From Iphione sp. A-MEVVRFRX5 (taxonomy: Eukaryota): 64,000 nt of DNA. Below the pieces are notes generated by a model. It made no database searches. It saw nothing but the letters and a program-made list of their open reading frames with translations, and was not told the DNA's origin. Of the stretch, positions 1 through 19,801 are shown piece after piece (the first letter of the stretch is position 1; each line of letters opens with the position of its first letter). The position numbers and the translations under genes were made by a program. The stretch is taken from NCBI GenBank assembly GCA_976226885.1, contig OZ320316.1, forward strand, positions 95,294,001-95,358,000, given 5' to 3'.

Positions 1-2164
1 TGTTCCTACTCGACATGTCATTGAAGCTCAAATTTACGTCCCTCCCTGAATCATTCATATTCCCGTCATCACGGAAATGCGCCTCGCAGACAGGCGCATA
101 GAGCTTAACGTGGATCACACCATGGAAATTATATAACTCCGTTTCAGTCGTTCCTCTCTCCCCCGCTCCCTTATATTCTCCACCCTCCCACCTTTCGCTC
201 ACTGTCCCCCTCCCTCACCTTGATCCTCCCTTGGTCTCCCTTTCCTTCCTGCCCCCCTTTTACCTGCCATTTATTCACCTCTTTACTAACCCTCCATACC
301 AGTTCAATTCTCCTCTGCTGCTCTCCCTTCACTTTCAACCATCCCCTTCGTTCCTCAAGCACTCGTCTCATGCGCTGCTCCCCTTGACTCCCTTCTGATC
401 TTCACATTTCCTTAGATACTTGACGCACCATTTTTTTCACATGAGGCGTCAAGGTACTTCACCATTTTAGCGGGCGGAGTACTCTTCAAGATCCATCTCT
501 GGATTTTCTGCTATTTGCCACCGTAAAATGGTTACTGCAGACGACGTTCCCTATTTCCACCTGAATATGATGGATGGTCTTCAGTACCATTTACACGCTT
601 GCACAGAGCCGTTTCCAATATACTCTGTATATGTTTTTTTGGAGCAGCCTCCCTGAAACACTAATCAATCTTTAAAAATTCAAATAGTATAAAATGGCTA
701 AGGTGGCATCGTTTATTAATTTGTTGTCTTTATATTCGTAATCATGCTTTGCAACGCAAATGTCGACTGACCGCAGAAGACATCTCTCTTCGTCCGATGC
801 ATTGTCTATAATCTTCCAATAGATTAAGTTTGCGAGGCTTACGAACTGTGTAATAAAACGTTTTAACCAGTGCTAGCGAATCTCCATTCCTACTTATCTG
901 TTATCACTTTAATAAACCACTACTATTATAATATCGGTAGTTCGAGCCTCTTTCTTGTTGCCATTCACCTCGTTTCATGATTTGCAATCCGCTTAAATAT
1001 CGTCTTTTTACCGCAGACGACATTGGACATTTTCCCTCCATACATCAAATCGAAGCTACTCATTCATACTTCAATCCAAGCATCCCTGATCCCATCCATA
1101 CCACAACCCATTAGTAAAGGGATAGTCCTCGGGGACGGACTGGAGTGAAGGGCACATGACCTGGGGTCAAGGCCATTTCAGGTGGTAAACGCTCTATGTA
1201 AACGGCAGTCACCTGACCGGAAGCGCATATCCCATGACTAACATGGCGTCTTGGGCTTCGCCATGGCTCGCGGTGTTATTGCGGCGGGCGATATTGGGAG
1301 AGTTCTAATATTGGCTTGAACCTTTCCTGACCTCCACCAATTCGTTCTGGTCACGTCCTATTTTCCATAAACAAGAAATACTGCGATGCTGTACGGTATG
1401 ACACATGGGATTTCATCTTCATTGCATCTCTTGTTCAACCATGTAGGATATTCTATGACATTTGAAACTGCCATTCTTGACAAGATCACGTCTAGTTTGA
1501 TATAACTTGTCTTTCTACTTCCATTGTCTTGATATTGTTGTAGATTCTTCCCTTTACGACTTGTTTCCCATATGAAATTGAGTACTATCCCCTATATAAC
1601 GTCTTTTCAAATATTAAAGTCAAATATCCGGTATATCTGCAGCCAGCTTTGATACTTTGCCTTAAAAGTTTCCACACGCATTTATATAAATCTACCAATG
1701 AATTGCTTCCTTCGACAGACAATATCTACTGGATTTAGATTTAGGAAAGGACTTGTAGTTTCGGTTAATACATGATTAAACAAGAAGACTTAAGAAAGTG
1801 CATGCCAAACAAAGTCACTGCACAACTATTTATTCTCTTTTTACACGGTGTTTCCTTTGAAGAACAACTAGCATTTGTGATTTAATAAACAATAGGATTG
1901 ATATCCTTTACAACAATGCTTACCCACCTTATCTATAAATACTCTATTGCTCTATTTGTATTCTACGTTATTACAATGACAGCGAATTATATAAAAACCT
2001 TAGTAGCATTGTAGATTCATGGTCCTCGATTGGTATGTATGCTCTCTTTGCCATGTTATAACTATGTACAAGATAGTTGCTCGTCGGGCTGCATGTTCCT
2101 TGCTGATCTATTAGCTTGATGACTGTATTTAGTATATTCGGACATTTAAACTGTTTCAATATAC

Positions 2165-2379
2165 TGTTGTGCGGAGCAGTAATATACTCCGCACCGAGTT
2201 ACTCAGCACGCTGAGCATGTATGTAAGTTACTCCTCACGTTGGCTCCGCACGATATGACTGTATGTATAAAAGCAAGTGCGTGCGGAGTTTAGTTCAGTT
2301 GCGTTCTTACCTCTCAGCAATAAACATCTAAACCTTACTTGGGAGTCTGCCTCCAGTATGTTAAGGTCTGGCCGTAACA
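2165..2379 (+). repeat. 5' LTR (215 bp)
   Basis: Starts TGTTGTGCGGAG, ends GGCCGTAACA; no difference from 10560-10774 found by eye; contains TATAAAA (2266-2272), TCAGTT (2295-2300) and AATAAA (2319-2324). Confidence 0.98.
2264..2300 (+). promoter_or_regulatory. LTR core promoter (TATA + Inr)
   Basis: TGTATAAAA at 2264-2272 and Inr-like TCAGTT at 2295-2300; the Inr A (2297) is 31 nt after the first T of TATA, a canonical spacing; GTGCGGAG lies between them (2281-2288). Confidence 0.75.
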
Positions 2380-2380
2380 T

Positions 2381-2398
2381 TGGTGGCAGCGGTGGGAT
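2381..2398 (+). other. Primer-binding site, tRNA-Leu (AAG/TAG type)
   Basis: TGGTGGCAGCGGTGGGAT, 1 nt after the 5' LTR, is complementary to the metazoan tRNA-Leu 3' end ...ATCCCACCGCTGCCACCA. Confidence 0.92.
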
Positions 2399-3851
2399 GG
2401 ATTCCCCCCTCGCAGACGAAGAACATCGTGGTGCGGAGCTCGGAGCGTGCGGAGGCGTGCGGAGTAGCTCGGCGTGCGGAGCAGCTCAGCGTGCGGAGCA
2501 GGACGAAGGGTCGACTCAGCGTGCGGAGTCCGCTGAGGCCGACGCTGAGCACCCCTGCGCTGAGCCCGCCGAGGCATGGCATGCGGAGCACGCCATGCGG
2601 ACAGGGCACACGGACACCCAGTTGCCCACGGCGGAGCTGCGCACCCCTAGCCTCATTAGCGGGTTCCTGCATGTCGGCGGAGCGGGCGCGGAAGCACAGT
2701 CGCCCGTCGCCACAGCGCGGGTTGCAGTTATCGAAGAACCTGCTAGGGGCCGGGGCCGCACTGGGAAGCGAGGAGGGGCCATCTCACCCATGGCGATGGG
2801 GGCCGGCGAAGGAGGGGTGGCCAAGGGTACGCCAGTTACCCGTGGGGCCCCTCGGACCCCGTCGCAACGGCCAGAATGGAGGAGCGGAAGGACGCAACTC
2901 GAAGAGGACGACTCATCCGACGGAAGCGCAGAGGAGCAGTCGGAGGATGAACTGTCCACGGATGAAGAAGATCGGGAACCGACCTTGGACGGAGAACGAG
3001 GACCGGTGGAGGAACTCGTCGGGGCGTTACGCCAAGCCCTGCAGCCACGGGAGACGCGCCGGCGGGTGCCAGTCAAGCCGGATGTATACGATGGGTCGAC
3101 CCCACTTTCGGATTTCCTGCACCATTATGAGCTGGTCTCTGAGGCCAACAGCTGGACGGGGAGAGAGAAGGCGCTACAGCTGGGGGTGAGCCTCAGGAAG
3201 GCCGCAAGGACCACCCTACGGAATGCTCAAGTGGACATGGAACAGCCCGACGCGTATGAGAGGATCGTGCAGGCTCTGACCGATAGGTTTCAGCCAGCAG
3301 ATCAAGTCGACGCCTACATACAACAACTCAAGTACCGGAGGCAGAAGAAAGAAGAAGGATTGGGGGAGCTGGCTGACGATATCGAGCGGCTGGTGCGCCT
3401 CGCCTATCCGGAGGCCACCGGGCAATGGAAGGATAGGATGTGCAGGGAGTATTTCTTAGGCTCCCTTTCGAATGAGAAAGAACGGAAGTGGGTCACCCAG
3501 GCGAGAGTTTCGACATTCCGGAAGACCGTGTCCGAGGCTCAGCTCGCGGAATCCTACTACAGTAGCAAGAGGGCACGCAACCCGATGAAGGTGCACAAGG
3601 TGGAACAAGTGGAAGACCCCAGCCCGTCGGCCAGGAAGGAGGAGGCCCCTCACTGGCAGCGAATTGAGGAGCTGCTGTCGGCCCTGTTGAAGAAGCAGGA
3701 AGGATCCGGGACTTCATCGCGTTCCCCTTCTGGGAAGAAGGGATGTTACTTCTGCGGCGACCTGACGCATTTCAAGCGGGACTGCCCCAAGTTTGCCGCT
3801 GCGAGACCTGACCAGTCGGGAAACGAAGTGGCGGCCGCTCCCCGGAGGTAG
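2397..3851 (+). CDS. gag: Gag polyprotein with one CCHC zinc knuckle
   Basis: ATG in strong context (gggATGg) at 2397, with an in-frame weak ATG at 2358 in U5; capsid-like start PDVYDGSTPLSDFLHHYELVSEANSW; knuckle CYFCGDLTHFKRDC; stop TAG 3849-3851. Confidence 0.93.
   Translation: MDSPLADEEHRGAELGACGGVRSSSACGAAQRAEQDEGSTQRAESAEADAEHPCAEPAEAWHAEHAMRTGHTDTQLPTAELRTPSLISGFLHVGGAGAEAQSPVATARVAVIEEPARGRGRTGKRGGAISPMAMGAGEGGVAKGTPVTRGAPRTPSQRPEWRSGRTQLEEDDSSDGSAEEQSEDELSTDEEDREPTLDGERGPVEELVGALRQALQPRETRRRVPVKPDVYDGSTPLSDFLHHYELVSEANSWTGREKALQLGVSLRKAARTTLRNAQVDMEQPDAYERIVQALTDRFQPADQVDAYIQQLKYRRQKKEEGLGELADDIERLVRLAYPEATGQWKDRMCREYFLGSLSNEKERKWVTQARVSTFRKTVSEAQLAESYYSSKRARNPMKVHKVEQVEDPSPSARKEEAPHWQRIEELLSALLKKQEGSGTSSRSPSGKKGCYFCGDLTHFKRDCPKFAAARPDQSGNEVAAAPRR
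2431..2682 (+). repeat. (GT)GCGGAG motif array in the gag 5' region
   Basis: GCGGAG at 2433, 2449, 2459, 2476, 2493, 2523, 2583, 2631, 2677 (six as GTGCGGAG), falling in different codon phases. Confidence 0.9.
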
Positions 3852-3864
3852 GGCGAGCGGCCGC
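3818..3864 (+). promoter_or_regulatory. -1 programmed ribosomal frameshift signal (gag-pol)
   Basis: Slippery heptamer G_GGA_AAC (3818-3824) in the gag frame, 6-nt spacer, then perfect 10-bp stem GCGGCCGCTC (3831-3840) / GAGCGGCCGC (3855-3864); the -1 frame is open from the slip site into pol. Confidence 0.88.
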
Positions 3865-6800
3865 GACTCATGCGGACGCAGCCTCGGGCGAGTTGGAAGA
3901 CCACCTGCGGAAGATCGACATCTTGGACGGGAACTGGCAAGAGGTGGTCTTGGAAGGCGATCCCGAGCGGCTTAAACGCGGAATAGTGATTCCGAGTAGG
4001 GTGAGCGGGGTGGAGGCGCAGTGGCTCGTCGACACTGGGGCCTCGCTTACACTCCTTAGTGAGGAGATTGCCCAAGCCGCCGGGATGCAGACGCTGAGCC
4101 CGGTGGAGGGCCGAGTCTTGTGTGCAGATGGAAGCCCGCTTCGAGTGCAAGGCAAGGTGGAGATTCAGGTTGACTTTGGGTCAGTGGAGTTGGAGGTGCA
4201 AGCGCTGGTGGCCAACATAGACTGTGATGCCATTCTCGGTCTCGATATGTTACGACGTTGGTACGCCACCTTGGACATGCGAAATCCCGGTTTGCGGATT
4301 TGGCTACCCCGGACTTCGGCGTGGGAGGAGTGGAAGGTGTGCTTGGTGCAGGACGGAACGGTCAAGGCCAGGAGTGTGGAGAGCGCGGAAGCTGTGATTT
4401 GCGGCGCTGGCAGGATGGACGCGGATATCCTAGTGGAGGGAACCGAAGAGTTCGAGGCTCGGACGGGACTTCGGGTGGCTAGGGCGTTGTGGCCAGCAGG
4501 AGCAAGGAAGGGCACAGTGCAGCTGTTCAACCCTGGAGGGACCGAGCTCCCAGTGCGACAGGGAGCTGTGATCGGAAGGGCGGCAGGGGCGCAGGAAGTG
4601 CAGCCAGGGCCGGGGCCCCGAGGATCGGCACCACGAGTGGCACCACCGGAGCTGATGGACGGACTGCCGGAATCGCTCACTCCAGAGGAACGACAGATGG
4701 TGGAGGGAATGCTCCAAGCCAACGCGGAAGTCTTCCAGAAGGAGGGGGAGCCACTAGGGAGCACGGACTGGCTTTACCATCGCATCGATACACAAGGTCA
4801 CCCACCGATCCGACAGCGGGTGCGGCGGTTGCCCCCGGAGAAGAGGAAGATAGTTCAGGCGGAGGTTGAGAGTATGGTCAAGAAGGGAGTCCTTGAGCCG
4901 TCGACCAGCCCGTGGGCCTCGCCTGTCGTCTTGGTCAAAAAGAAGGACGGGACCTGGCGATTTTGCATTGACTACAGGAGTCTGAATAGGGTAACCAAGA
5001 AGGATGCATACCCACTACCTAGGATCGACGACACGCTGGACGCATTAGAAGGCGCGACCTACTTCTCAGCGATCGACCTGGCTGCCGGGTACTGGCAAGT
5101 ACAACTTGAACCCCAGGACAGGGAGAAGACGGCGGTTTGCACAGCCAGCGGCCTGTACCAGTTTCGGGTGATGCCGTTCGGGCTGTGCAACGCGCCGTCC
5201 ACTTTCGAGCGACTGATGGAAGCCGTACTGCGCGGGTTGGTGGGGCAGACTTGTTTAGTCTACCTCGACGATGTCATCGTCATTGGCCGCACTGTACAGG
5301 AGATGGTGGAGCGCCTGGACCAAGTCTTCGGCCGCCTGACAGCAGCGGGGTTGAAGGTCAAGCCGTCCAAGTGCCAGCTCTTCCGACGGGAGGTGAGCTA
5401 CCTCGGGCACCGGGTCTCCGCTGAAGGAGTGGGACCGGACCCAGCCAAGATCGAGGCCATCCAAGATTGGCCAGCTCCACGCTGTTTAACGGAACTGCGA
5501 AGCTTTGTGGGACTGTGTTCTTACTATCGGAGTTTCGTTCGGGGATTCGCTACCATCACAGCCCCACTCAACGCCCTGCTGGCTAAGGACGCCGAGTACC
5601 GCTGGAGTGAGGACTGCCAGCAGGCCTTCGACGAGCTCAAGCAGAGTCTCACCTCTGCACCAGTCCTGGGCTACCCTAGACCGGAAGGACGGCTTCATCT
5701 AGACACGGATGCCTCGGCCGGAGGGATAGGCGCGGTCCTCTCCCAGGAGCAGGATGGGAAGGAACGGGTGCTGGCCTATGCCAGTCGGACGTTGACTCGC
5801 CCAGAGAAGAACTACTGCGTCACCCGTCGGGAGCTATTGGCGGTCGTCTTTGGGCTTCGCAAGTTCCGGCCGTACCTTGGGGGACAGCATGTGGAGATTC
5901 GCACGGACCACAATTCGCTCAGGTGGTTGTGCAACTTCCGTGAGCCGGAGGGACAACTTGCCCGATGGCTGGAAGAAATCTACACATACGATCTGGATAT
6001 TGTCCACCGCCCGGGAAAACAGCACGGCAATGCGGATGGACTGTCCCGAGTGGAGTGCCCCCAGTGCGGAAGGCGGGAAAGCCCCGGACAAGTGGCGGCG
6101 GTGCGAGGAGCGTCGTCCATGGGCCGGGGGGAGCTCCTGCGGGCACAACAGCAAGAGACGTTGACTAAAGGACTCTTGGAGGCGCTGGAGGAGGGCCGAG
6201 CCGAACCCCCTCCGACCGGACCCGTCACCTGGGAGGAACGACGGCTACTCAGTGAATGGCCCAGACTCTCCGTGAGGGGAGGGCTGCTTCATCGGAGATG
6301 GGAGACGGAAGACGGGAGTCCCCGATTTCAAGTTTACGTGCCCAGGACCCTGCGGCGGTCTTTGTGGCAGGAGGTTCACGCCGGCGCGCTCGGAGGGCAT
6401 CTTGGCAGTCGGAAGACGGAGGGAGCTGTACGGTTGCGTTACTTCTGGCCGGGGCTGACCCGAGACCTGGAGACCTGGGGAAGGGCATGTCCCGAGTGCC
6501 AACAAGTCAAGGACCCGTCCACCAGGAAGAGGGCACCCCTGCAGGGACGAGTAATTCCCGGACCCTGGGAGTTCGTTGCGGTGGATGTGTGCGGACCGTT
6601 CCCCGAGACGCCGCGAGGGAACCGCTACATCATCGTCATCGCTGACCACTTTACCAAGTGGACTGAGGCATTCGCAACCCCTGATGCCACTGCAGAGACC
6701 ACGGCTCGCGTCCTACTCCGAGAAGTCGTCTGCCGTTTCGGACCGCCCCGGACCCTTCACTCAGATCAAGGAAGGAACTTCGAGTCAGCCGTGTTCCGGG

Positions 6801-9800
6801 AACTCCTGTCGCTGCTGGGAATCCAGAAGTCTCGCACTACTCCGTACCACCCTCAGAGTGACGGAGTAGTAGAACGGTTCAATCGTACCCTGGTGAAGAT
6901 GCTAGCGGCCACTGTGGACGAGGACCAGTCGGACTGGGATGAGAGGCTTCCTATGGTGATGGCCGCCTACAGGTCTACCCCCCACCAGGCTACGGGGTAC
7001 ACGCCTAATCTTCTTATGTTGCAGCGAGAGACGACACTCCCCGTAGAACTGCTGTTCGGAGCTCCGGTGGACGCGCCCACACCTCGAGAGGAACTGGTAG
7101 AGACGTGTCGGACGCGGTTGGTGGAGGCTCATGGTCTGGTAAGGAGACGGCTCCAACGGGCGGCCCGCCGTCAGAAGGACTGGTATGATCAAAGGGTGCG
7201 GCCCCAGAGCTACCGAGAGGGAGCACAGGTGTGGTTGTTCTCCCCGGCAAAGACGAAGGGACGATCGCCTAAACTGGAAAAACACTGGTCGGGGCCATGG
7301 ACGGTATTGGCCAGGCTCTCTGAGGTAATCTATCGCCTCAGCCGCGGTAAGAAAAGAAGAGTGGTGCATGCTGACCTGATCAAGCCGATGTTCCCTTCAC
7401 AGGAATCCGTGCAAGTAGAGGGACGAGCCCAGAGCGTGGGTTGGGCCGCGAGGAGAGAGCACGAACCACGGAAAGGAAGTGGCGGCGTCTGGACTCGGTC
7501 AGGGAGCGGCCCCCTGCGGAGCCCGGAAACGCCCTCCGTGCGGAGCACGCCGCAGGCCAATCACCGTCGTGCGGAGTCGCCCCGGAGTCTGTATAAAAAG
7601 GATCGCGTGCGGAGCACGACACTCAGTTCGTCAACTGCAGCCGACCGCGGAGCATCGACCCACGCTGAGCACGCACGTGCGGAGTACGAGCCCTACTCCG
7701 CACCACCTGAGCGCAAGGTACTTAAGGACGAAGTGCGGAGCCCGACGCCCATTCGACTTGCCGCTGCTGACCGGGGAACATCCATCGAGACTACCGTTGA
7801 CGCCGAGCAGGGACGCTGCTCCGCACGTGCGGAGTTAAGACACTACTCCGCACGAGTAGAACACTGGTGTTGCTCCGCACGGACTGAGCTCGCCGACTAC
7901 TCCGCACGGCACGACTCCGCACGGACCCAGCACCGTGACTGCTCCGCACGAACTGGAGGCACCATGGCCGGGTGCAGGTTCCATTGTTCGGAGTGTGACT
8001 ACTCCAGTGACAGGCACGCCAACCTCCTACGCCACCTGGAGGTGCATGGGAACCGGGGATTCGGACGTGTCTGCCCCGCCCCGGAGTGTCATCTCAAAGC
8101 CTTCCGGCGGAGGGATGACTTCCGGCGTCACCTGGAACGGAAGCACTCCGGAGGGGAGGGCCATCCCCTGATGCTGGGGCAGACCGTGGATGTGCAGTAC
8201 CTGGAGTACTCTCAGTCTGCCCCGTTTGTGGCTGTCACGCTGCCGGTACCCGCCGACAAGCAGGAAGAGTTCGAGCGGCTGAAGAAGAAGGAGGAGTATG
8301 AGAGGAGGAAGGAGCTAGCCATCATGAGGGGGGTTGACCCTCCGAGCCCGCCTCGGGGACGACGCCCATCGACCAAGACGCGCCGCCCCAGTGCAGCGGT
8401 GGGGAAGGCCCCTGCTGATGCTCGCCCCCCGGGGGGTGAGGCCGTGACTGGGGGACGGGGAGAGCCGAGGCCCTCAACATCTGGGCAGCCGACAAGCAAG
8501 GATCCTCGGCCGCCCCCGTCTAAACAAGTGACGATCCGAGAGCCAGCCCGGGTAACCACGAGAGAGGCCACCCCAGCGCCTGCGCCACCGCGGCCAGCCG
8601 GACTGCCGCCCAAGGGCCGTCAAGTAGGGGCTCGGCCCACCGCAGCTGAAGCATCTACCCAGCCGAAGGCCCCCCCAGCCGTCCAGCGGCTGGTTACGGC
8701 GGAGACCATTTCCAGTACCGGCTCGCCGACTCCTTCGATGCGTGGAGCCCGCCTGGACGCCGGTACCCCTGGAACGCGGATCCAGCTATGGGGGCTGGAT
8801 CACTCAGCAAACACCACGCCGAGCGACCTGTCCTTGACGCCACAGCTGATCGAGGCGGCCCGACGGAGCGAGATGCGGCAGCGGGAGCGGGCCCGAGGCC
8901 AGGAGGCAGAGCCGCAAGAAGACACCCCGGGGCAGACGAAGCGCCGGCGTTCCGCCTGGGCCTCCCCGCCGGCAGGTTCCCCCCCCACACCGGGGAGGGA
9001 CTGGTCTCCGGCTGAGGGGGGCAAAGACGCTGAGCAGCAGCCACGAGGGAGGAAGAGGACGCCGAGGACCCCGAGGACGATAGCTGCCTCCACTCGGGTC
9101 ACCCGCAGCCAGAGTCGGGCCAGCACTACACCAGGGTCCACCATCACGGATCTCAGCCAGGACGCCAGGGAGGTGGAGAGACGGCTGGGCTTCGCCTGGA
9201 CTCCTGCCCGCCCCACTGAGGTGGTGGTCACTTCCGAGGAGGAAGGAGGGGATGACGGCACGACCGCCGTTGCTGGAGCTCAGGAGGGGCAGAGGGACCC
9301 TCGGGCCTCCACCCCCCTTCCTTCTGCTGGGGCCCAAGCCACCCAAGGGACCCAGCAGGAGGTGCCACCGCCCAGAGGGGCATCTTCGTGCCGTGCTGAG
9401 ACAGGAAGGAAGGTGCCCTCGCCGGTCCAGGAGGAGTGGGTTTACACCGAGGCAGATGAAGCTGGCGACGACGACATGGGGGAGGTCCCAACACTCGAGC
9501 CACCGCAGACCTCCCTGGGCGTCACGGTGTCCACCGTGGACTTTCCGGGGACATCGGAGGATGCCGGCACATCTGGTGGGTCTCAGGCCCCTTCCGCAGG
9601 AGCTGAGGCCGCCCCACCCCCACCTGCTGACGGAGCCCCACAGCGCGAGGAGGCCGAGGAAGCGGTCTCGTCCAGTGGCCACCCAAGTTCAGCGGCTGAC
9701 GAGGAGGAGGAGCACGACGGCGGCCAAGATGAGCGGGGAGACGAGTCTCTACAGCGGCCAACCGAGAATCGTCGCACCACTGTCCGAGGGTCGCCGGTGC

Positions 9801-10117
9801 ACCGCTGGGCCTACCGTCGGCTGTTGGACACGCACGAGCCCCCACCCGAGGGGTGGGAGTGGGTCGCAGCCAACTCTCGGGTCAACTTCGAGCTGGAGGA
9901 GCCGCCGCATCGGGTCACCTTCAGCCACAGAATGGACTTGCGGTCGGAGGCTGAGGGCACCCGCCCTCAGGCGATCGTCGACTGGTATCAGGACCGGCAG
10001 AGCGGGCATCCGTGTCCTCGAGGCCGGCTGGTCCATGAGGAGGCTACCTTGGCGTCGCGGGGGCGTCACAGCTCCTCCCTGTCGGCGGAAGAATCCTTCG
10101 TTCTGCAAGAACCGTGA
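3821..10117 (+). CDS. pol: Pol (protease, RT, RNase H, integrase) with about 900-aa C-terminal in-frame extension
   Basis: PR LVDTGA (D at 4031); RT YLDD (5261-5272); RH DASAGGIGAVL (5708); IN HHCC (6377-6500), D 6584, D 6764, E 6872 (D-35-E), GPY/F-like WSGPW (about 7286-7300); the frame continues without a stop to TGA 10115-10117. Confidence 0.95.
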   Translation, partial: KRSGGRSPEVGRAAATHADAASGELEDHLRKIDILDGNWQEVVLEGDPERLKRGIVIPSRVSGVEAQWLVDTGASLTLLSEEIAQAAGMQTLSPVEGRVLCADGSPLRVQGKVEIQVDFGSVELEVQALVANIDCDAILGLDMLRRWYATLDMRNPGLRIWLPRTSAWEEWKVCLVQDGTVKARSVESAEAVICGAGRMDADILVEGTEEFEARTGLRVARALWPAGARKGTVQLFNPGGTELPVRQGAVIGRAAGAQEVQPGPGPRGSAPRVAPPELMDGLPESLTPEERQMVEGMLQANAEVFQKEGEPLGSTDWLYHRIDTQGHPPIRQRVRRLPPEKRKIVQAEVESMVKKGVLEPSTSPWASPVVLVKKKDGTWRFCIDYRSLNRVTKKDAYPLPRIDDTLDALEGATYFSAIDLAAGYWQVQLEPQDREKTAVCTASGLYQFRVMPFGLCNAPSTFERLMEAVLRGLVGQTCLVYLDDVIVIGRTVQEMVERLDQVFGRLTAAGLKVKPSKCQLFRREVSYLGHRVSAEGVGPDPAKIEAIQDWPAPRCLTELRSFVGLCSYYRSFVRGFATITAPLNALLAKDAEYRWSEDCQQAFDELKQSLTSAPVLGYPRPEGRLHLDTDASAGGIGAVLSQEQDGKERVLAYASRTLTRPEKNYCVTRRELLAVVFGLRKFRPYLGGQHVEIRTDHNSLRWLCNFREPEGQLARWLEEIYTYDLDIVHRPGKQHGNADGLSRVECPQCGRRESPGQVAAVRGASSMGRGELLRAQQQETLTKGLLEALEEGRAEPPPTGPVTWEERRLLSEWPRLSVRGGLLHRRWETEDGSPRFQVYVPRTLRRSLWQEVHAGALGGHLGSRKTEGAVRLRYFWPGLTRDLETWGRACPECQQVKDPSTRKRAPLQGRVIPGPWEFVAVDVCGPFPETPRGNRYIIVIADHFTKWTEAFATPDATAETTARVLLREVVCRFGPPRTLHSDQGRNFESAVFRELLSLLGIQKSRTTPYHPQSDGVVERFNRTLVKMLAATVDEDQSDWDERLPMVMAAYRSTPHQATGYTPNLLMLQRETTLPVELLFGAPVDAPTPREELVETCRTRLVEAHGLVRRRLQRAARRQKDWYDQRVRPQSYREGAQVWLFSPAKTKGRSPKLEKHWSGPWTVLARLSEVIYRLSRGKKRRVVHADLIKPMFPSQESVQVEGRAQSVGWAARREHEPRKGSGGVWTRSGSGPLRSPETPSVRSTPQANHRRAESPRSLYKKDRVRSTTLSSSTAADRGASTHAEHARAEYEPYSAPPERKVLKDEVRSPTPIRLAAADRGTSIETTVDAEQGRCSARAELRHYSARVEHWCCSARTELADYSARHDSARTQHRDCSARTGGTMAGCRFHCSECDYSSDRHANLLRHLEVHGNRGFGRVCPAPECHLKAFRRRDDFRRHLERKHSGGEGHPLMLGQTVDVQYLEYSQSAPFVAVTLPVPADKQEEFERLKKKEEYERRKELAIMRGVDPPSPPRGRRPSTKTRRPSAAVGKAPADARPPGGEAVTGGRGEPRPSTSGQPTSKDPRPPPSKQVTIREPARVTTREATPAPAPPRPAGLPPKGRQVGARPTAAEASTQPKAPPAVQRLVTAETISSTGSPTPSMRGARLDAGTPGTRIQLWGLDHSANTTPSDLSLTPQLIEAARRSEMRQRERARGQEAEPQEDTPGQTKRRRSAWASPPAGSPPTPGRDWSPAEGGKDAEQQPRGRKRTPRTPRTIAASTRVTRSQSRASTTPGSTITDLSQDAREVERRLGFAWTPARPTEVVVTSEEEGGDDGTTAVAGAQEGQRDPRASTPLPSAGAQATQGTQQEVPPPRGASSCRAETGRKVPSPVQEEWVYTEADEAGDDDMGEVPTLEPPQTSLGVTVSTVDFPGTSEDAGTSGGSQAPSAGAEAAPPPPADGAPQREEAEEAVSSSGHPSSAADEEEEHDGGQDERGDESLQRPTENRRTTVRGSPVHRWAYRRLLDTHEPPPEGWEWVAANSRVNFELEEPPHRVTFSHRMDLRSEAEGTRPQAIVDWYQDRQSGHPCPRGRLVHEEATLASRGRHSSSLSAEESFVLQEP
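7516..7947. repeat. GCGGAG/CTCCGC motif array between integrase and the zinc fingers
   Basis: 15 copies: forward 7516, 7540, 7571, 7609, 7647, 7679, 7735, 7829; reverse 7696, 7819, 7846, 7873, 7900, 7915, 7942. Confidence 0.92.
7590..7628 (+). promoter_or_regulatory. Candidate internal promoter duplicating the LTR core promoter
   Basis: TGTATAAAA (7590-7598), gcGTGCGGAG (7607-7614, same +15 offset from TATA as in the LTR) and TCAGTT (7623-7628); the first ATG downstream is 7964. Confidence 0.65.
7964..10117 (+). CDS. ORF3: putative 717-aa C2H2 zinc-finger protein (in frame with pol); not an Env
   Basis: gcaccATGg Kozak context; fingers FHCSECDYSSDRHANLLRHLEVH and VCPAPECHLKAFRRRDDFRRHLERKH (7979-8146); charged helix; long P/S/T/A/E/R low-complexity region; basic clusters TKRRR and RGRKR; Trp-rich C-terminal about 110 aa; no signal peptide or transmembrane segment seen. 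Confidence 0.7.
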   Translation: MAGCRFHCSECDYSSDRHANLLRHLEVHGNRGFGRVCPAPECHLKAFRRRDDFRRHLERKHSGGEGHPLMLGQTVDVQYLEYSQSAPFVAVTLPVPADKQEEFERLKKKEEYERRKELAIMRGVDPPSPPRGRRPSTKTRRPSAAVGKAPADARPPGGEAVTGGRGEPRPSTSGQPTSKDPRPPPSKQVTIREPARVTTREATPAPAPPRPAGLPPKGRQVGARPTAAEASTQPKAPPAVQRLVTAETISSTGSPTPSMRGARLDAGTPGTRIQLWGLDHSANTTPSDLSLTPQLIEAARRSEMRQRERARGQEAEPQEDTPGQTKRRRSAWASPPAGSPPTPGRDWSPAEGGKDAEQQPRGRKRTPRTPRTIAASTRVTRSQSRASTTPGSTITDLSQDAREVERRLGFAWTPARPTEVVVTSEEEGGDDGTTAVAGAQEGQRDPRASTPLPSAGAQATQGTQQEVPPPRGASSCRAETGRKVPSPVQEEWVYTEADEAGDDDMGEVPTLEPPQTSLGVTVSTVDFPGTSEDAGTSGGSQAPSAGAEAAPPPPADGAPQREEAEEAVSSSGHPSSAADEEEEHDGGQDERGDESLQRPTENRRTTVRGSPVHRWAYRRLLDTHEPPPEGWEWVAANSRVNFELEEPPHRVTFSHRMDLRSEAEGTRPQAIVDWYQDRQSGHPCPRGRLVHEEATLASRGRHSSSLSAEESFVLQEP

Positions 10118-10206
10118 GCACGACTTCCCCCCCAGTATAGGGAAGGGGAGAGTTTGATAGGGGCTTGCCCCCCACCTTACATCAGTTTTCAAGTTACAGC
10201 TGGGAG

Positions 10207-10432
10207 CCTGTACTGGCCTCCTCATTACTCTTTGCAGTTCAAGTTTGGCCTGTACTGGCCCCCTTTTTCTTGTTGGGAACCTGTCTTGGTTTCCCCTGTT
10301 ACTAGTTCACTTTGGAGCCTGTACTGGCTCATATGTTGTTGGACCTGTACTGGTCTTTTGCATTTCAAATGTCAGGCACCTGTACTGGTGTCTTTGCCCT
10401 CCCTAGTCAGTAAGCAGAGAAGCCTGTATTGG
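10207..10432 (+). repeat. CCTGTACTGG dispersed repeat in the element 3' UTR
   Basis: Exact copies at 10207, 10249, 10318, 10344, 10379; variants at 10280 (CCTGTCTTGG) and 10423 (CCTGTATTGG). Confidence 0.9.
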
Positions 10433-10545
10433 TTTGCTCTTTCTCTTCACTAGTTATAGTTCCACCCCAGTCCAGGAGGTGAGAATATAAGTACAACAAG
10501 GTAGTGGTTAGATAAGTTTTATTGAGCTCGGGGACCGAGCTTTTC

Positions 10546-10559
10546 AAGGGAGGGGATAG
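10546..10559 (+). other. Polypurine tract
   Basis: AAGGGAGGGGATAG immediately 5' of the 3' LTR. Confidence 0.9.
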
Positions 10560-10774
10560 TGTTGTGCGGAGCAGTAATATACTCCGCACCGAGTTACTCA
10601 GCACGCTGAGCATGTATGTAAGTTACTCCTCACGTTGGCTCCGCACGATATGACTGTATGTATAAAAGCAAGTGCGTGCGGAGTTTAGTTCAGTTGCGTT
10701 CTTACCTCTCAGCAATAAACATCTAAACCTTACTTGGGAGTCTGCCTCCAGTATGTTAAGGTCTGGCCGTAACA
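10560..10774 (+). repeat. 3' LTR (215 bp)
   Basis: Direct repeat of 2165-2379, preceded by the PPT and followed by TSD ATAC; AATAAA at 10714-10719. Confidence 0.98.
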
Positions 10775-11107
10775 ATACCTTTTTAACAGTTATTTTCTAT
10801 TTGCACCGCTTATGTCATTTAGTGCAACATATGCATACTTAGGAATTAGCAAGTGTAACTCCTCAGCCATTATTGAGGAAATTTGGTCAATGTACAAACC
10901 ACAGAGAAGCAGGTGGTTATTTCTACTCAGTTTGGCGGCCGTAATGAGGCAACATTGATTAAAATGGTCTAGACTCCCTGTACAGACATTATCATTATTA
11001 AAGAAACACAACAACGCTATATTAACTATAAGCATTAGCACCATATTACTCATTAGTGATTGGTTACAATGTTGTAACAATAAGACAAATTATGACAGAA
11101 TTATGAT

Positions 11108-14983: not shown

Positions 14984-15118
14984 NNNNNNNNNNNNNNNNN
15001 NNNNNNNNNNNNNNNNNNNNNNNNNNNNNNNNNNNNNNNNNNNNNNNNNNNNNNNNNNNNNNNNNNNNNNNNNNNNNNNNNNNNNNNNNNNNNNNNNNNN
15101 NNNNNNNNNNNNNNNNNN
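14984..15118. other. Assembly gap (135 N) next to a degenerate CAC/CAT-rich repeat
   Basis: N run; flanked by ATC/ACC-type triplet repeats from about 14800. Confidence 0.97.
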
Positions 15119-19670: not shown

Positions 19671-19801
19671 NNNNNNNNNNNNNNNNNNNNNNNNNNNNNN
19701 NNNNNNNNNNNNNNNNNNNNNNNNNNNNNNNNNNNNNNNNNNNNNNNNNNNNNNNNNNNNNNNNNNNNNNNNNNNNNNNNNNNNNNNNNNNNNNNNNNNN
19801 N
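19671..19801. other. Assembly gap (131 N)
   Basis: N run. Confidence 0.97.

What the first reader, a model, noticed from the sequence alone, without database searches (positions are those of the whole stretch)
7964..8146. Retrotransposon-encoded C2H2 fingers whose predicted target (GCGGAG) is the element's own repeated motif: candidate autoregulatory circuit
Seen: finger 1 helix positions -1/+3/+6 are R/N/R (RHANLLR); finger 2 has R/D/R with D at +2 (RRDDFRR); the linker is 8 residues. Established C2H2 code: R-N-R helices (RSDNLVR type) read GAG, R-D/E-R helices (RSDDLVR, Zif268 RSDELTR) read GCG, and fingers bind antiparallel, so the pair predicts 5'-GCG GAG-3'. Seen: exactly this hexamer is clustered 4x in each LTR, 9x in the gag 5' region and 15x around the internal TATA (about 32 copies by hand), versus only a handful elsewhere in the 8.6-kb element. 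The one-mismatch variant GCTGAG recurs in the same places. Inference: the element encodes a sequence-specific transcription factor that binds both of its own promoters, giving a feedback switch (transactivation, self-repression or anti-silencing). The protein-derived prediction and the DNA repeat are independent observations that agree, which makes this the strongest lead in the window.
Basis: partly seen in the sequence, partly recalled or inferred. Interest (0 to 1): 0.93.

Follow-up and report, generated by a model that had tools for sequence, protein, structure and literature searches.

The report
Retrotransposon zinc fingers matching own motif
A young gypsy-type jumping gene carries, fused in frame behind its integrase, a two-zinc-finger protein whose predicted DNA target is the core of a short motif that the element repeats about 30 times around its two promoter-like regions, so it may regulate itself, though no binding or expression was tested.

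Summary
Window 2165-10774 is an intact 8,610-bp Ty3/gypsy element with identical 215-bp LTRs and an ATAC target duplication. Residues encoded at 7964-8146 form two C2H2 fingers with helices RHANLLR and RRDDFRR. GCGGAG occurs 39 times in the window against 9.5 expected: 4 per LTR, 9 in the gag 5' region and 15 at 7516-7947.

Three corrections apply:
- The real motif is longer, (C)GTGCGGAG(Y)(A), with 27 copies of the 8-mer.
- The finger "ORF3" is not separate. It runs in frame with pol without a stop, and that frame is kept open in two diverged lineages.
- The system belongs to a whole clade in this genome.

Support for self-recognition is comparative. Non-autonomous family B has saturated synonymous divergence in this ORF, yet keeps the base-contacting residues, the motif arrays, and TATA plus a motif copy at the same spacing. 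Sister family C has another finger-1 helix (KKANLER) and arrays of a variant motif, GTGCGGTC, at the same place. The invariant GTGCGG goes with the invariant contacts. The recognition code does not predict GTC, so the covariation is only qualitative.

Binding, transcription and the direction of regulation are untested, and no RNA runs were listed. The scan noted the same system in other windows of this genome. No precedent turned up in the literature searches.

The parts
2161..2164 (.). Target-site duplication ATAC (second copy at 10775-10778)
   Evidence: Three family B insertions have ATAC or ATAY-like duplications in AT-rich DNA.
2165..2379 (+). 5' LTR of 215 bp, TG...CA. TATA at 2266-2273, initiator-like TCAGTT at 2295-2300, AATAAA at 2319-2324. 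Motif copies at 2169-2176(+), 2187-2194(-), 2244-2251(-) and 2281-2288(+).
   Evidence: It matches the 3' LTR over all 215 bases.
2381..2398 (+). Primer-binding site TGGTGGCAGCGGTGGGAT
   Evidence: The assignment to tRNA-Leu is from memory and was not tested.
2397..3851 (+). gag: first in-frame ATG at 2397, weak CCHC knuckle near the C-terminus
   Evidence: zf-CCHC 19.5 bits, just under the 20.8 cut-off.
2431..2682 (+). 5' array: 9 GCGGAG copies, all on the + strand, 6 of them the full GTGCGGAG, inside the gag 5' region
   Evidence: The array is kept in family B.
3893..7390 (+). pol: protease, reverse transcriptase, RNase H, integrase (H2C2, core, C-terminal SH3-like domain)
   Evidence: The frame is -1 relative to gag.
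7391..7963 (+). Linker between integrase and the fingers, open in the pol frame. It holds 15 motif copies, CCAAT at 7557-7561, TATA at 7592-7599, a motif copy at 7607-7614, and initiator-like TCAGTT at 7623-7628.
   Evidence: 0 stops in the pol frame against 3 and 8 in the other frames. CCAAT, TATA and the post-TATA motif copy are the only alignable parts against family B.
7964..8146 (+). Two C2H2 zinc fingers with helices RHANLLR and RRDDFRR
8147..8350 (+). Conserved segment after the fingers, including a predicted long charged helix (residues 97-122 of the ORF)
   Evidence: omega 0.23; pLDDT about 80 for the helix only.
8351..9763 (+). Long low-complexity, Pro/Arg-rich and acidic middle region
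   Evidence: omega 0.27.
9764..10117 (+). Conserved C-terminal domain of about 117 aa, fold unknown, followed by the stop codon
   Evidence: omega 0.08; no fold match.
10207..10432 (+). Seven copies of CCTGTAYTGG in the 3' untranslated region
10546..10559 (+). Polypurine tract AAGGGAGGGGATAG
10560..10774 (+). 3' LTR with the same four motif copies

Best explanation
This is a recently inserted, intact member of a clade of Ty3/gypsy retrotransposons whose Pol polyprotein continues past integrase into an extension of about 720 residues. The extension begins with a two-finger C2H2 DNA-binding module. Most likely this module recognises the element's own repeated motif, (C)GTGCGGAG. In that model finger 2 (R-1, D+2, D+3, R+6) reads GCG, and finger 1 reads G through R+6 and the last two bases through N+3 and R-1.

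The motif sits on both sides of the TATA box in U3, with one copy fixed between TATA and the initiator. It also forms an array just downstream of the LTR. The same layout recurs around a second TATA-plus-initiator module, which lies upstream of an ATG in good Kozak context at the start of the fingers. The protein would therefore act on both promoters of its own element, which would be a self-recognition loop.

What is shown: the anatomy, the enrichment, the conservation and the family-specific pairing. What is inferred: binding, use of the internal promoter, and whether the protein activates, represses or counteracts silencing. Because the frame from pol is kept open, the protein is probably made at least partly as the tail of Gag-Pol and possibly also from a subgenomic transcript.
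For: (1) The predicted hexamer is the core of the top k-mer. CGTGCGGAG occurs 20 times and GTGCGGAG 27 times in 8.6 kb, and TCCGCA scores z=14.
(2) Family B shares the LTR and gag (96.7% identity), but its finger ORF differs from A at dS about 1.6, with omega 0.16 for the fingers and 0.08 for the C-terminal domain. Finger 1 changes at +1, +2, +4 and +5 but keeps R/N/R. The finger 2 helix is identical.
(3) The region upstream of the fingers is unalignable between A and B except for CCAAT, TATA and GTGCGGAG at the same distance after TATA. Both lineages keep arrays, 15 and 13 copies.
(4) Family C has integrase 69-70% identical to A and open frames of about 2,500 aa. It has a homologous finger pair: GFGRRCPAP with finger 1 helix KKANLER in at least 40 copies. 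It carries arrays of GACCGCAC, the complement of GTGCGGTC, 200-750 nt upstream of its fingers: 107 paired hits against 14 in the control. A and B have 27 and 20 copies of GTGCGGAG and none of GTGCGGTC. Old relatives with KKxNLE helices carry the same C-type motif in its two CpG-decayed forms.
(5) The motif occurs in both orientations in the promoters, which fits recognition of double-stranded DNA.
(6) All 30 distinct A copies examined keep the ATG context and the internal TATA, and 27 of them keep an identical finger peptide.
Against: The motif has 8 to 11 conserved positions (C-G-T before GCGGAG and Y-A after it), and two fingers explain only 6 to 7 of them. The linker is not the canonical TGEKP type, and finger 2 has an extra residue before its helix, so canonical docking is assumed rather than shown. 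For family C the code predicts GAG or GAT for K/N/R, not GTC. GCGG(A/G)G also occurs in each 24-nt unit of C, so the motif change is not cleanly explained by the helix change. The GTGCGG core shared by all families would equally fit a host factor. No specificity predictor could be run, and there are no binding, RNA, transcription-start or protein data. The arrays next to the fingers lie in translated sequence and could also act as RNA: 7640-7965 folds with z = -3.5.
Confidence: 0.45

Rival explanations
1. The repeated motif is the binding site of a host transcription factor that the element uses for its promoters. The encoded fingers would then do something else, such as protein or RNA binding or chromatin tethering. 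The match to the recognition code would be a coincidence helped by the G-richness of Arg-rich helices.
For: The GTGCGG core is shared by families A, B, C and the old relatives even though finger 1 differs. The motif is longer than a two-finger site. The C-family ending GTC is not what the code predicts. There is a precedent in the Su(Hw) site array of Drosophila gypsy, which is bound by a host zinc-finger protein (own knowledge).
Against: All six predicted bases match in A and B. The contact residues are kept at saturated dS while neighbouring helix positions change. The family-specific motif ending goes with the family-specific finger 1, and the invariant part goes with the invariant contacts. 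The finger module is retained in non-autonomous B, which has lost RT and integrase.
Confidence: 0.25
2. The fingers are a targeting or tethering module of integrase, like the chromodomain of chromoviruses or the N-terminal fingers of R2. In this reading they steer integration, or anchor the pre-integration complex on the element's own cDNA. The first motif copy starts 5 bases from the U3 end.
For: The ORF is continuous with integrase and the frame is kept open. In A there are 0 stops in 192 codons (P about 0.007). In B there are 0 stops in 370 codons against 12 and 12 in the other frames (P about 1e-5). Sister families also have very long Pol frames.
Against: Four insertion sites (one A, three B) are AT-rich, have ATAY duplications and hold no GCGGAG within 500 bp on either side. 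Family B keeps the fingers but has no integrase. The U5 end has no motif.
Confidence: 0.1
3. The motif works in RNA. Copies in opposite orientation pair with each other, or are bound by Gag or the fingers, to mark the genomic RNA for packaging, dimerisation or translation control.
For: The 5' array lies just downstream of the primer-binding site, where packaging signals usually sit, and all nine copies have one orientation. Region 7640-7965 folds better than all 100 shuffles, z -3.5, by pairing + and - copies. B keeps gag, protease, the fingers and the arrays but not RT or integrase, as expected of functions that act in cis.
Against: The 5' array has no excess structure (z -0.6). The copies upstream of the LTR TATA lie in U3 in both orientations, flanking a core promoter. 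The motif copy between TATA and the initiator keeps the same spacing in both promoter-like modules.
Confidence: 0.1

Closest known systems
Foamy virus Tas (Bel1) with LTR and internal promoter
   Same: A retroelement-encoded DNA-binding protein from the 3' part of the genome, with binding sites in both the LTR promoter and an internal promoter just upstream of its own gene, giving feedback. The PMC4929722 and PMC8670036 abstracts state that Tas binds or activates both promoters.
   Different: Tas is not a zinc-finger protein and is a separate ORF of a vertebrate retrovirus. Here the protein is a C2H2 pair in frame with Pol of a Ty3/gypsy element. No homology was found, and neither binding nor promoter use is shown.
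Drosophila gypsy 5' untranslated array of Su(Hw) sites
   Same: A gypsy-type element with a dense array of one short motif just downstream of the 5' LTR, read by a C2H2 zinc-finger protein (own knowledge).
   Different: Su(Hw) is a host protein with 12 fingers and the array acts as an insulator. Here the candidate reader is encoded by the element itself, and the motif also sits in the core promoters.
Engineered and natural C2H2 fingers with known triplets (RSDNLVR reads GAG, RSDDLVR reads GCG; CTCF finger 3, RRSNLDR)
   Same: The same residues at -1/+3/+6, and D at +2 in finger 2. Tables in PMC5260015 and PMC7317221 give the triplets. The closest solved finger by sequence is a CTCF finger with helix RRSNLDR.
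   Different: Positions +1, +2, +4 and +5 differ. The linker has 8 residues and is not TGEKP. There are only two fingers, followed by a conserved non-finger segment.
Accessory modules on retrotransposon proteins: the chromodomain on chromovirus integrase, and the N-terminal zinc fingers of R2
   Same: An extra nucleic-acid or chromatin-reading module attached to the element's own enzymes (PMC6338049 lists the chromodomain).
   Different: Those modules choose integration targets. Here the insertion sites show no relation to the motif, and the module survives in a derivative without integrase.

Membership tests
Ty3/gypsy LTR retrotransposon (Metaviridae) | Domain order protease, RT, RNase H, integrase in pol | tested here: met
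   Pfam: gag-asp_proteas at 36-122, RVT_1 at 348-508, RT_RNaseH_2 at 571-669, Integrase_H2C2 at 816-874, rve at 896-987, all above their cut-offs.
Ty3/gypsy LTR retrotransposon (Metaviridae) | Direct LTRs ending TG...CA, primer-binding site, polypurine tract, short target duplication | tested here: met
   LTRs of 215 bp at 2165-2379 and 10560-10774, primer-binding site at 2381-2398, polypurine tract at 10546-10559, duplication ATAC.
Ty3/gypsy LTR retrotransposon (Metaviridae) | gag with CCHC nucleocapsid knuckle | tested here: inconclusive
   zf-CCHC scores 19.5 bits against a cut-off of 20.8.
Classical C2H2 zinc finger (DNA-binding type) | C-x2-4-C-x12-H-x3-5-H spacing and a profile match | tested here: met
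   Finger 1 is exact. Finger 2 has x13 and H-x4-H. zf-H2C2_5 scores 41.2 bits against 27, and zf-C2H2 scores 30.9 against 25.2 with 2 stretches.
Classical C2H2 zinc finger (DNA-binding type) | Canonical TGEKP-type linker between tandem fingers | tested here: not met
   The linker is GNRGFGRV in A and ELQGFGRL in B, 8 residues between His and Cys.
Classical C2H2 zinc finger (DNA-binding type) | Sequence-specific binding to double-stranded DNA | not testable with these tools
   No protein-DNA predictor or experiment was available. The AF2 model shows helices at 17-28 and 50-61 but with low confidence, mean pLDDT 57.
Retroelement with a self-encoded transactivator and internal promoter (foamy-virus type) | Same binding motif in the LTR promoter and in an internal promoter upstream of the regulator gene | tested here: met
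   Met at the sequence level only. In both places the order is TATA, 8 bases, GTGCGGAG, then TCAGTT, at 2266-2300 and 7592-7628, with further motif copies around each. The layout is kept in B.
Retroelement with a self-encoded transactivator and internal promoter (foamy-virus type) | Internal promoter is used, and the regulator binds and changes transcription | not testable with these tools
   No RNA runs were listed, and there is no binding assay.
Errantivirus-type gypsy with env as third ORF | Separate env ORF encoding an envelope glycoprotein | tested here: not met
   The region after integrase is in frame with pol. Pfam finds only zinc fingers there. No homologue was found. Transmembrane segments were not specifically tested.
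Chromovirus | Chromodomain at the integrase C-terminus | tested here: not met
   No chromodomain hit in 3893-10114 at E up to 0.1.

The most novel reading that the evidence does not exclude
A whole clade of gypsy retrotransposons carries its own sequence-specific C2H2 transcription factor as the tail of Pol. Each family keeps a private pairing of finger helix and motif: A/B pair RxxNxxR with GTGCGGAG, and C pairs KKANLER with GTGCGGTC. The motif is written into its LTR core promoter, an array after the LTR and an internal promoter. Each family would then switch on, or shield from silencing, only its own copies. This would be a retrotransposon counterpart of the Tas circuit of foamy viruses, and a mirror image of host KRAB zinc-finger repression.
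Probability: 0.3. Interest if true: 0.85.

Novelty: new variant of a known kind. Interest (0 to 1): 0.72.

Why it matters
LTR retrotransposons are generally thought to depend on host transcription factors. Self-encoded, DNA-binding regulators acting on an LTR and an internal promoter are known from complex retroviruses. If these fingers bind the element's own motif, several things follow:
- It would show that a simple gypsy element can carry its own promoter-specific factor.
- It would give a natural set of finger-and-site pairs that diverge between sister families.
- It would offer a model for how elements escape or pre-empt host silencing. The element is CpG-rich (observed/expected 0.84) in a CpG-depleted genome (0.46), and the motif holds two CpGs.
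- It would explain why a non-autonomous derivative keeps gag, protease and the finger protein while dropping RT and integrase.

The hypothesis can be tested directly with a 65-residue peptide and a 9-bp site.

Tried and rejected
- **Homologues in other organisms.** A word-based search with the 717-aa ORF found nothing. An exhaustive profile search of 1.84 billion representatives with the 129-aa N-terminus gave only generic multi-finger proteins, none covering the segment after the fingers. The Atlas features search gave only weak zinc-finger clusters. Cross-species covariation could therefore not be tested.
- **Expression.** No RNA run was listed. The internal promoter and any splicing remain untested.
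- **Structure.** AF2 models of the N-terminal 129 aa and the C-terminal 130 aa had low confidence, pLDDT 57 and 53. Foldseek against the PDB gave no match for the C-terminal domain.
- **Sister families.** I did not try to read their sequence stepwise through pattern matches. I ran only hypothesis-driven patterns, so the LTRs of C and D and their full motif sets are unknown.
- **N at +3 of finger 2.** This lead looked like covariation. It is better explained by CpG decay of GAC-GAY to GAC-AAY in old copies, so I rejected it.
- **Promoter patterns.** TATA, 8 bases, then GTGCGG followed by a base other than A gave 14 hits against 19 in the control. The same pattern with the A-type motif but another spacer found only A-like variants, none at C coordinates.
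- **Integration targeting to the motif.** None of 4 insertion sites holds the motif.
- **Other.** Complex prediction was not used because it does not handle protein-DNA pairs. No zinc-finger specificity predictor was available, so the code assignment rests on published module tables and established knowledge. Five of the six literature searches looked for a precedent and found none.
Full report
**Anatomy.** Window 2165-10774 is one 8,610-bp LTR retrotransposon.
- Its 215-bp LTRs (TG...CA) match over their whole length and are flanked by an ATAC duplication.
- A primer-binding site starts one base after the 5' LTR, and a polypurine tract precedes the 3' LTR.
- gag (2397-3851) is followed in the -1 frame by pol with protease, RT, RNase H and integrase, so this is a Ty3/gypsy element.
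- The window is 41% G+C, while the element's interior is 57-71%.
- The genome is 1.18 Gb. It holds at least 60 copies that are 90-100% identical in this region, many with the full open frame, so the family is young.

**The observation.**
- 7964-8146 encodes two C2H2 fingers with helices RHANLLR and RRDDFRR and an 8-residue linker.
- GCGGAG occurs 39 times in the window against 9.5 expected.
- The published module tables give RSDNLVR for GAG and RSDDLVR for GCG. N-terminal fingers read the 3' triplet (established knowledge), so 5'-GCGGAG-3' is the canonical prediction.

**Three corrections.**
1. *The motif is longer.* An unbiased k-mer count shows that the repeated unit is (C)GTGCGGAG(Y)(A). 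There are 27 copies of the 8-mer and 20 of CGTGCGGAG in 8.6 kb, and the 8-mer occurs 28 times in the window against 0.63 expected. The hexamer is therefore only the core, and two fingers do not account for the conserved C-G-T on its 5' side.
2. *The fingers are not a separate ORF3.* 3893-10117 is a single ORF. The 192 codons between integrase and the ATG have no stop, against 3 and 8 in the other frames (P about 0.007).
3. *The 7480-7963 region is both translated and promoter-like.* It holds CCAAT, TATAAAAA, a motif copy 8 bases later, then TCAGTT. This is the same order and spacing as in the LTR (TATA at 2266, motif at 2281, TCAGTT at 2295). The ATG at 7964 has the context CACCATGG.

**Family B.** A much more abundant 6.26-kb relative has the same LTR (99%) and gag (96.7%). 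Its protease is only 48% identical, and it has no RT, RNase H or integrase. It has one 1,350-codon frame running from protease into a diverged copy of the finger protein.
- Its 370-codon linker has 0 stops against 12 and 12 in the other frames (P about 1e-5).
- Between A and B the finger ORF has saturated synonymous divergence (dS about 1.6). Omega is 0.16 for the fingers, 0.23 for the next 64 residues and 0.08 for the last 117. It is therefore a real protein under purifying selection.
- Finger 1 changes at +1, +2, +4 and +5 (RHANLLR to RQSNVDR) but keeps -1, +3 and +6. The finger 2 helix is identical.
- The DNA upstream of the fingers is unalignable between A and B except for CCAAT, TATA and GTGCGGAG at the same spacing after TATA. 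Both carry arrays, 15 and 13 copies.

**Family C and old relatives.** Autonomous sister families have integrase 69-71% identical to A and even longer Pol frames, 2,366-2,541 codons.
- A pattern for the inter-finger peptide GFGRxCPAP, written to exclude the A and B codons, hit 60 sites against 0 in the control. Many lie 1.6 kb downstream of those integrases.
- Exactly 45 nt upstream of these anchors, at least 40 copies encode K-K-A-N-L-E-R-H. Finger 1 of family C is therefore K/N/R, with other residues at the non-contact positions.
- Six decayed relatives (CpG observed/expected 0.2-0.4) have KKxNLE helices. In the 800 nt before their fingers, ACCACA occurs 21 times against 2.2 expected, and CTGCAC is enriched too. 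These are the two CpG-decay products of GACCGCAC.
- Searching the genome for pairs of GACCGCAC gave 107 hits against 14 in the control. They lie 200-750 nt upstream of the family C fingers, on the same strand as the CTCCGCAC copies of A.
- A and B have 27 and 20 copies of GTGCGGAG and no GTGCGGTC.

The invariant GTGCGG thus goes with the invariant contacts: the finger 2 residues R-1, D+2, D+3 and R+6, and R+6 of finger 1. The variable last two bases go with the variable finger 1. This fits the antiparallel docking model in position but not in identity, because the code predicts GAG or GAT for K/N/R, not GTC. In addition, each 24-nt unit of C also holds GCGG(A/G)G. An apparent D-to-N change at +3 of finger 2 in some copies is best explained by CpG decay. 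Finger 2 of most C copies was not read. Two decayed copies read FRRRDNFKRH, from which RRDDFKR is inferred.

**Alternatives.**
- *Host factor.* A host factor reading the shared GTGCGG core cannot be excluded.
- *Integrase targeting.* This is unlikely. Four insertion sites are AT-rich with ATAY duplications and no motif within 500 bp, and B has no integrase.
- *RNA-level role.* This is possible for the array next to the fingers, which folds with z -3.5 through pairing of opposite copies. It does not fit the 5' array (z -0.6) or the U3 copies.

**What could not be done.**
- No homologue of the protein was found outside this genome.
- No RNA runs were listed.
- The structure models had low confidence.

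**Comparison with known systems.** The layout is closest to foamy viruses, whose Tas protein binds both the LTR and an internal promoter, and to the Su(Hw) site array of Drosophila gypsy. It differs from both in that the candidate reader is a C2H2 pair fused to Pol of a gypsy element. Literature searches found no described case. Other first-stage notes report the same kind of element in other windows of this genome. Those notes are not independent evidence.

**Verdict.** I rate it a new variant of a known kind, with interest 0.72.

Noticed in passing
window 10207-10432: Seven copies of CCTGTAYTGG, spaced 26-44 bp apart, fill the 3' untranslated region between the ORF stop and the polypurine tract. 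This is a second, unrelated repeated motif of unknown role.
   Followed up: partly
window 2209, 2484, 2543, 2558, 4092, 7663, 9028, 10604: CGCTGAGC occurs 8 times inside the element, and 9 times in the window against 0.7 expected. It is often seen as ACGCTGAGCA next to the main motif. It may be a weaker variant site or the site of a second factor.
   Followed up: partly
G000:C11:89581590-89587848 (L043 plus L048); also L044/L049 and L047/L052: Family B is a chimeric non-autonomous element. Its LTR and gag are nearly identical to A, its last 987 bases are 87% identical, and its interior comes from a distant lineage lacking RT, RNase H and integrase. It appears to have more copies than A, which points to recombination and parasitism between families.
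   Followed up: partly
L053-L058 compared with window 2165-10774: CpG observed/expected is 0.84 in the young element, 0.46 in the rest of the window and 0.17-0.40 in old relatives. The host genome therefore loses CpG in old copies, and the main motif itself contains two CpGs.
   Followed up: partly
window 7640-7965: As RNA this stretch folds at -127 kcal/mol, z -3.5 against shuffles, because + and - motif copies pair. This may matter for a subgenomic leader or for translation through the region.
   Followed up: partly
window 7819-7949: Six minus-orientation motif copies are spaced 27, 27, 27, 15 and 27 nt apart, all in one reading frame (xSAR). Together with the neighbouring plus copy they encode SARAE. 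B encodes SARAE and C encodes TARAE at the same place, so the DNA motif is overlaid on a short peptide repeat.
   Followed up: partly
G000:C2:122372690-122883303: Four copies of a C-type finger variant (GFGRHCPAP) lie within 0.5 Mb, which may be a segmental or tandem duplication.
   Followed up: no
L025 2252-2940 (also L005): A family B-like protease lies in reverse orientation inside the finger ORF of a family A copy, which looks like a nested insertion.
   Followed up: no
window 14984-15118 and 19671-19801: Two runs of N, 135 and 131 bases long.
   Followed up: no
G000:C1:32834068 and about ten sites listed: Further finger-2 variants, FSRRDDFRRH and FGRRDNFRRH, indicate more finger-bearing families in this genome than the ones characterised here.
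   Followed up: no
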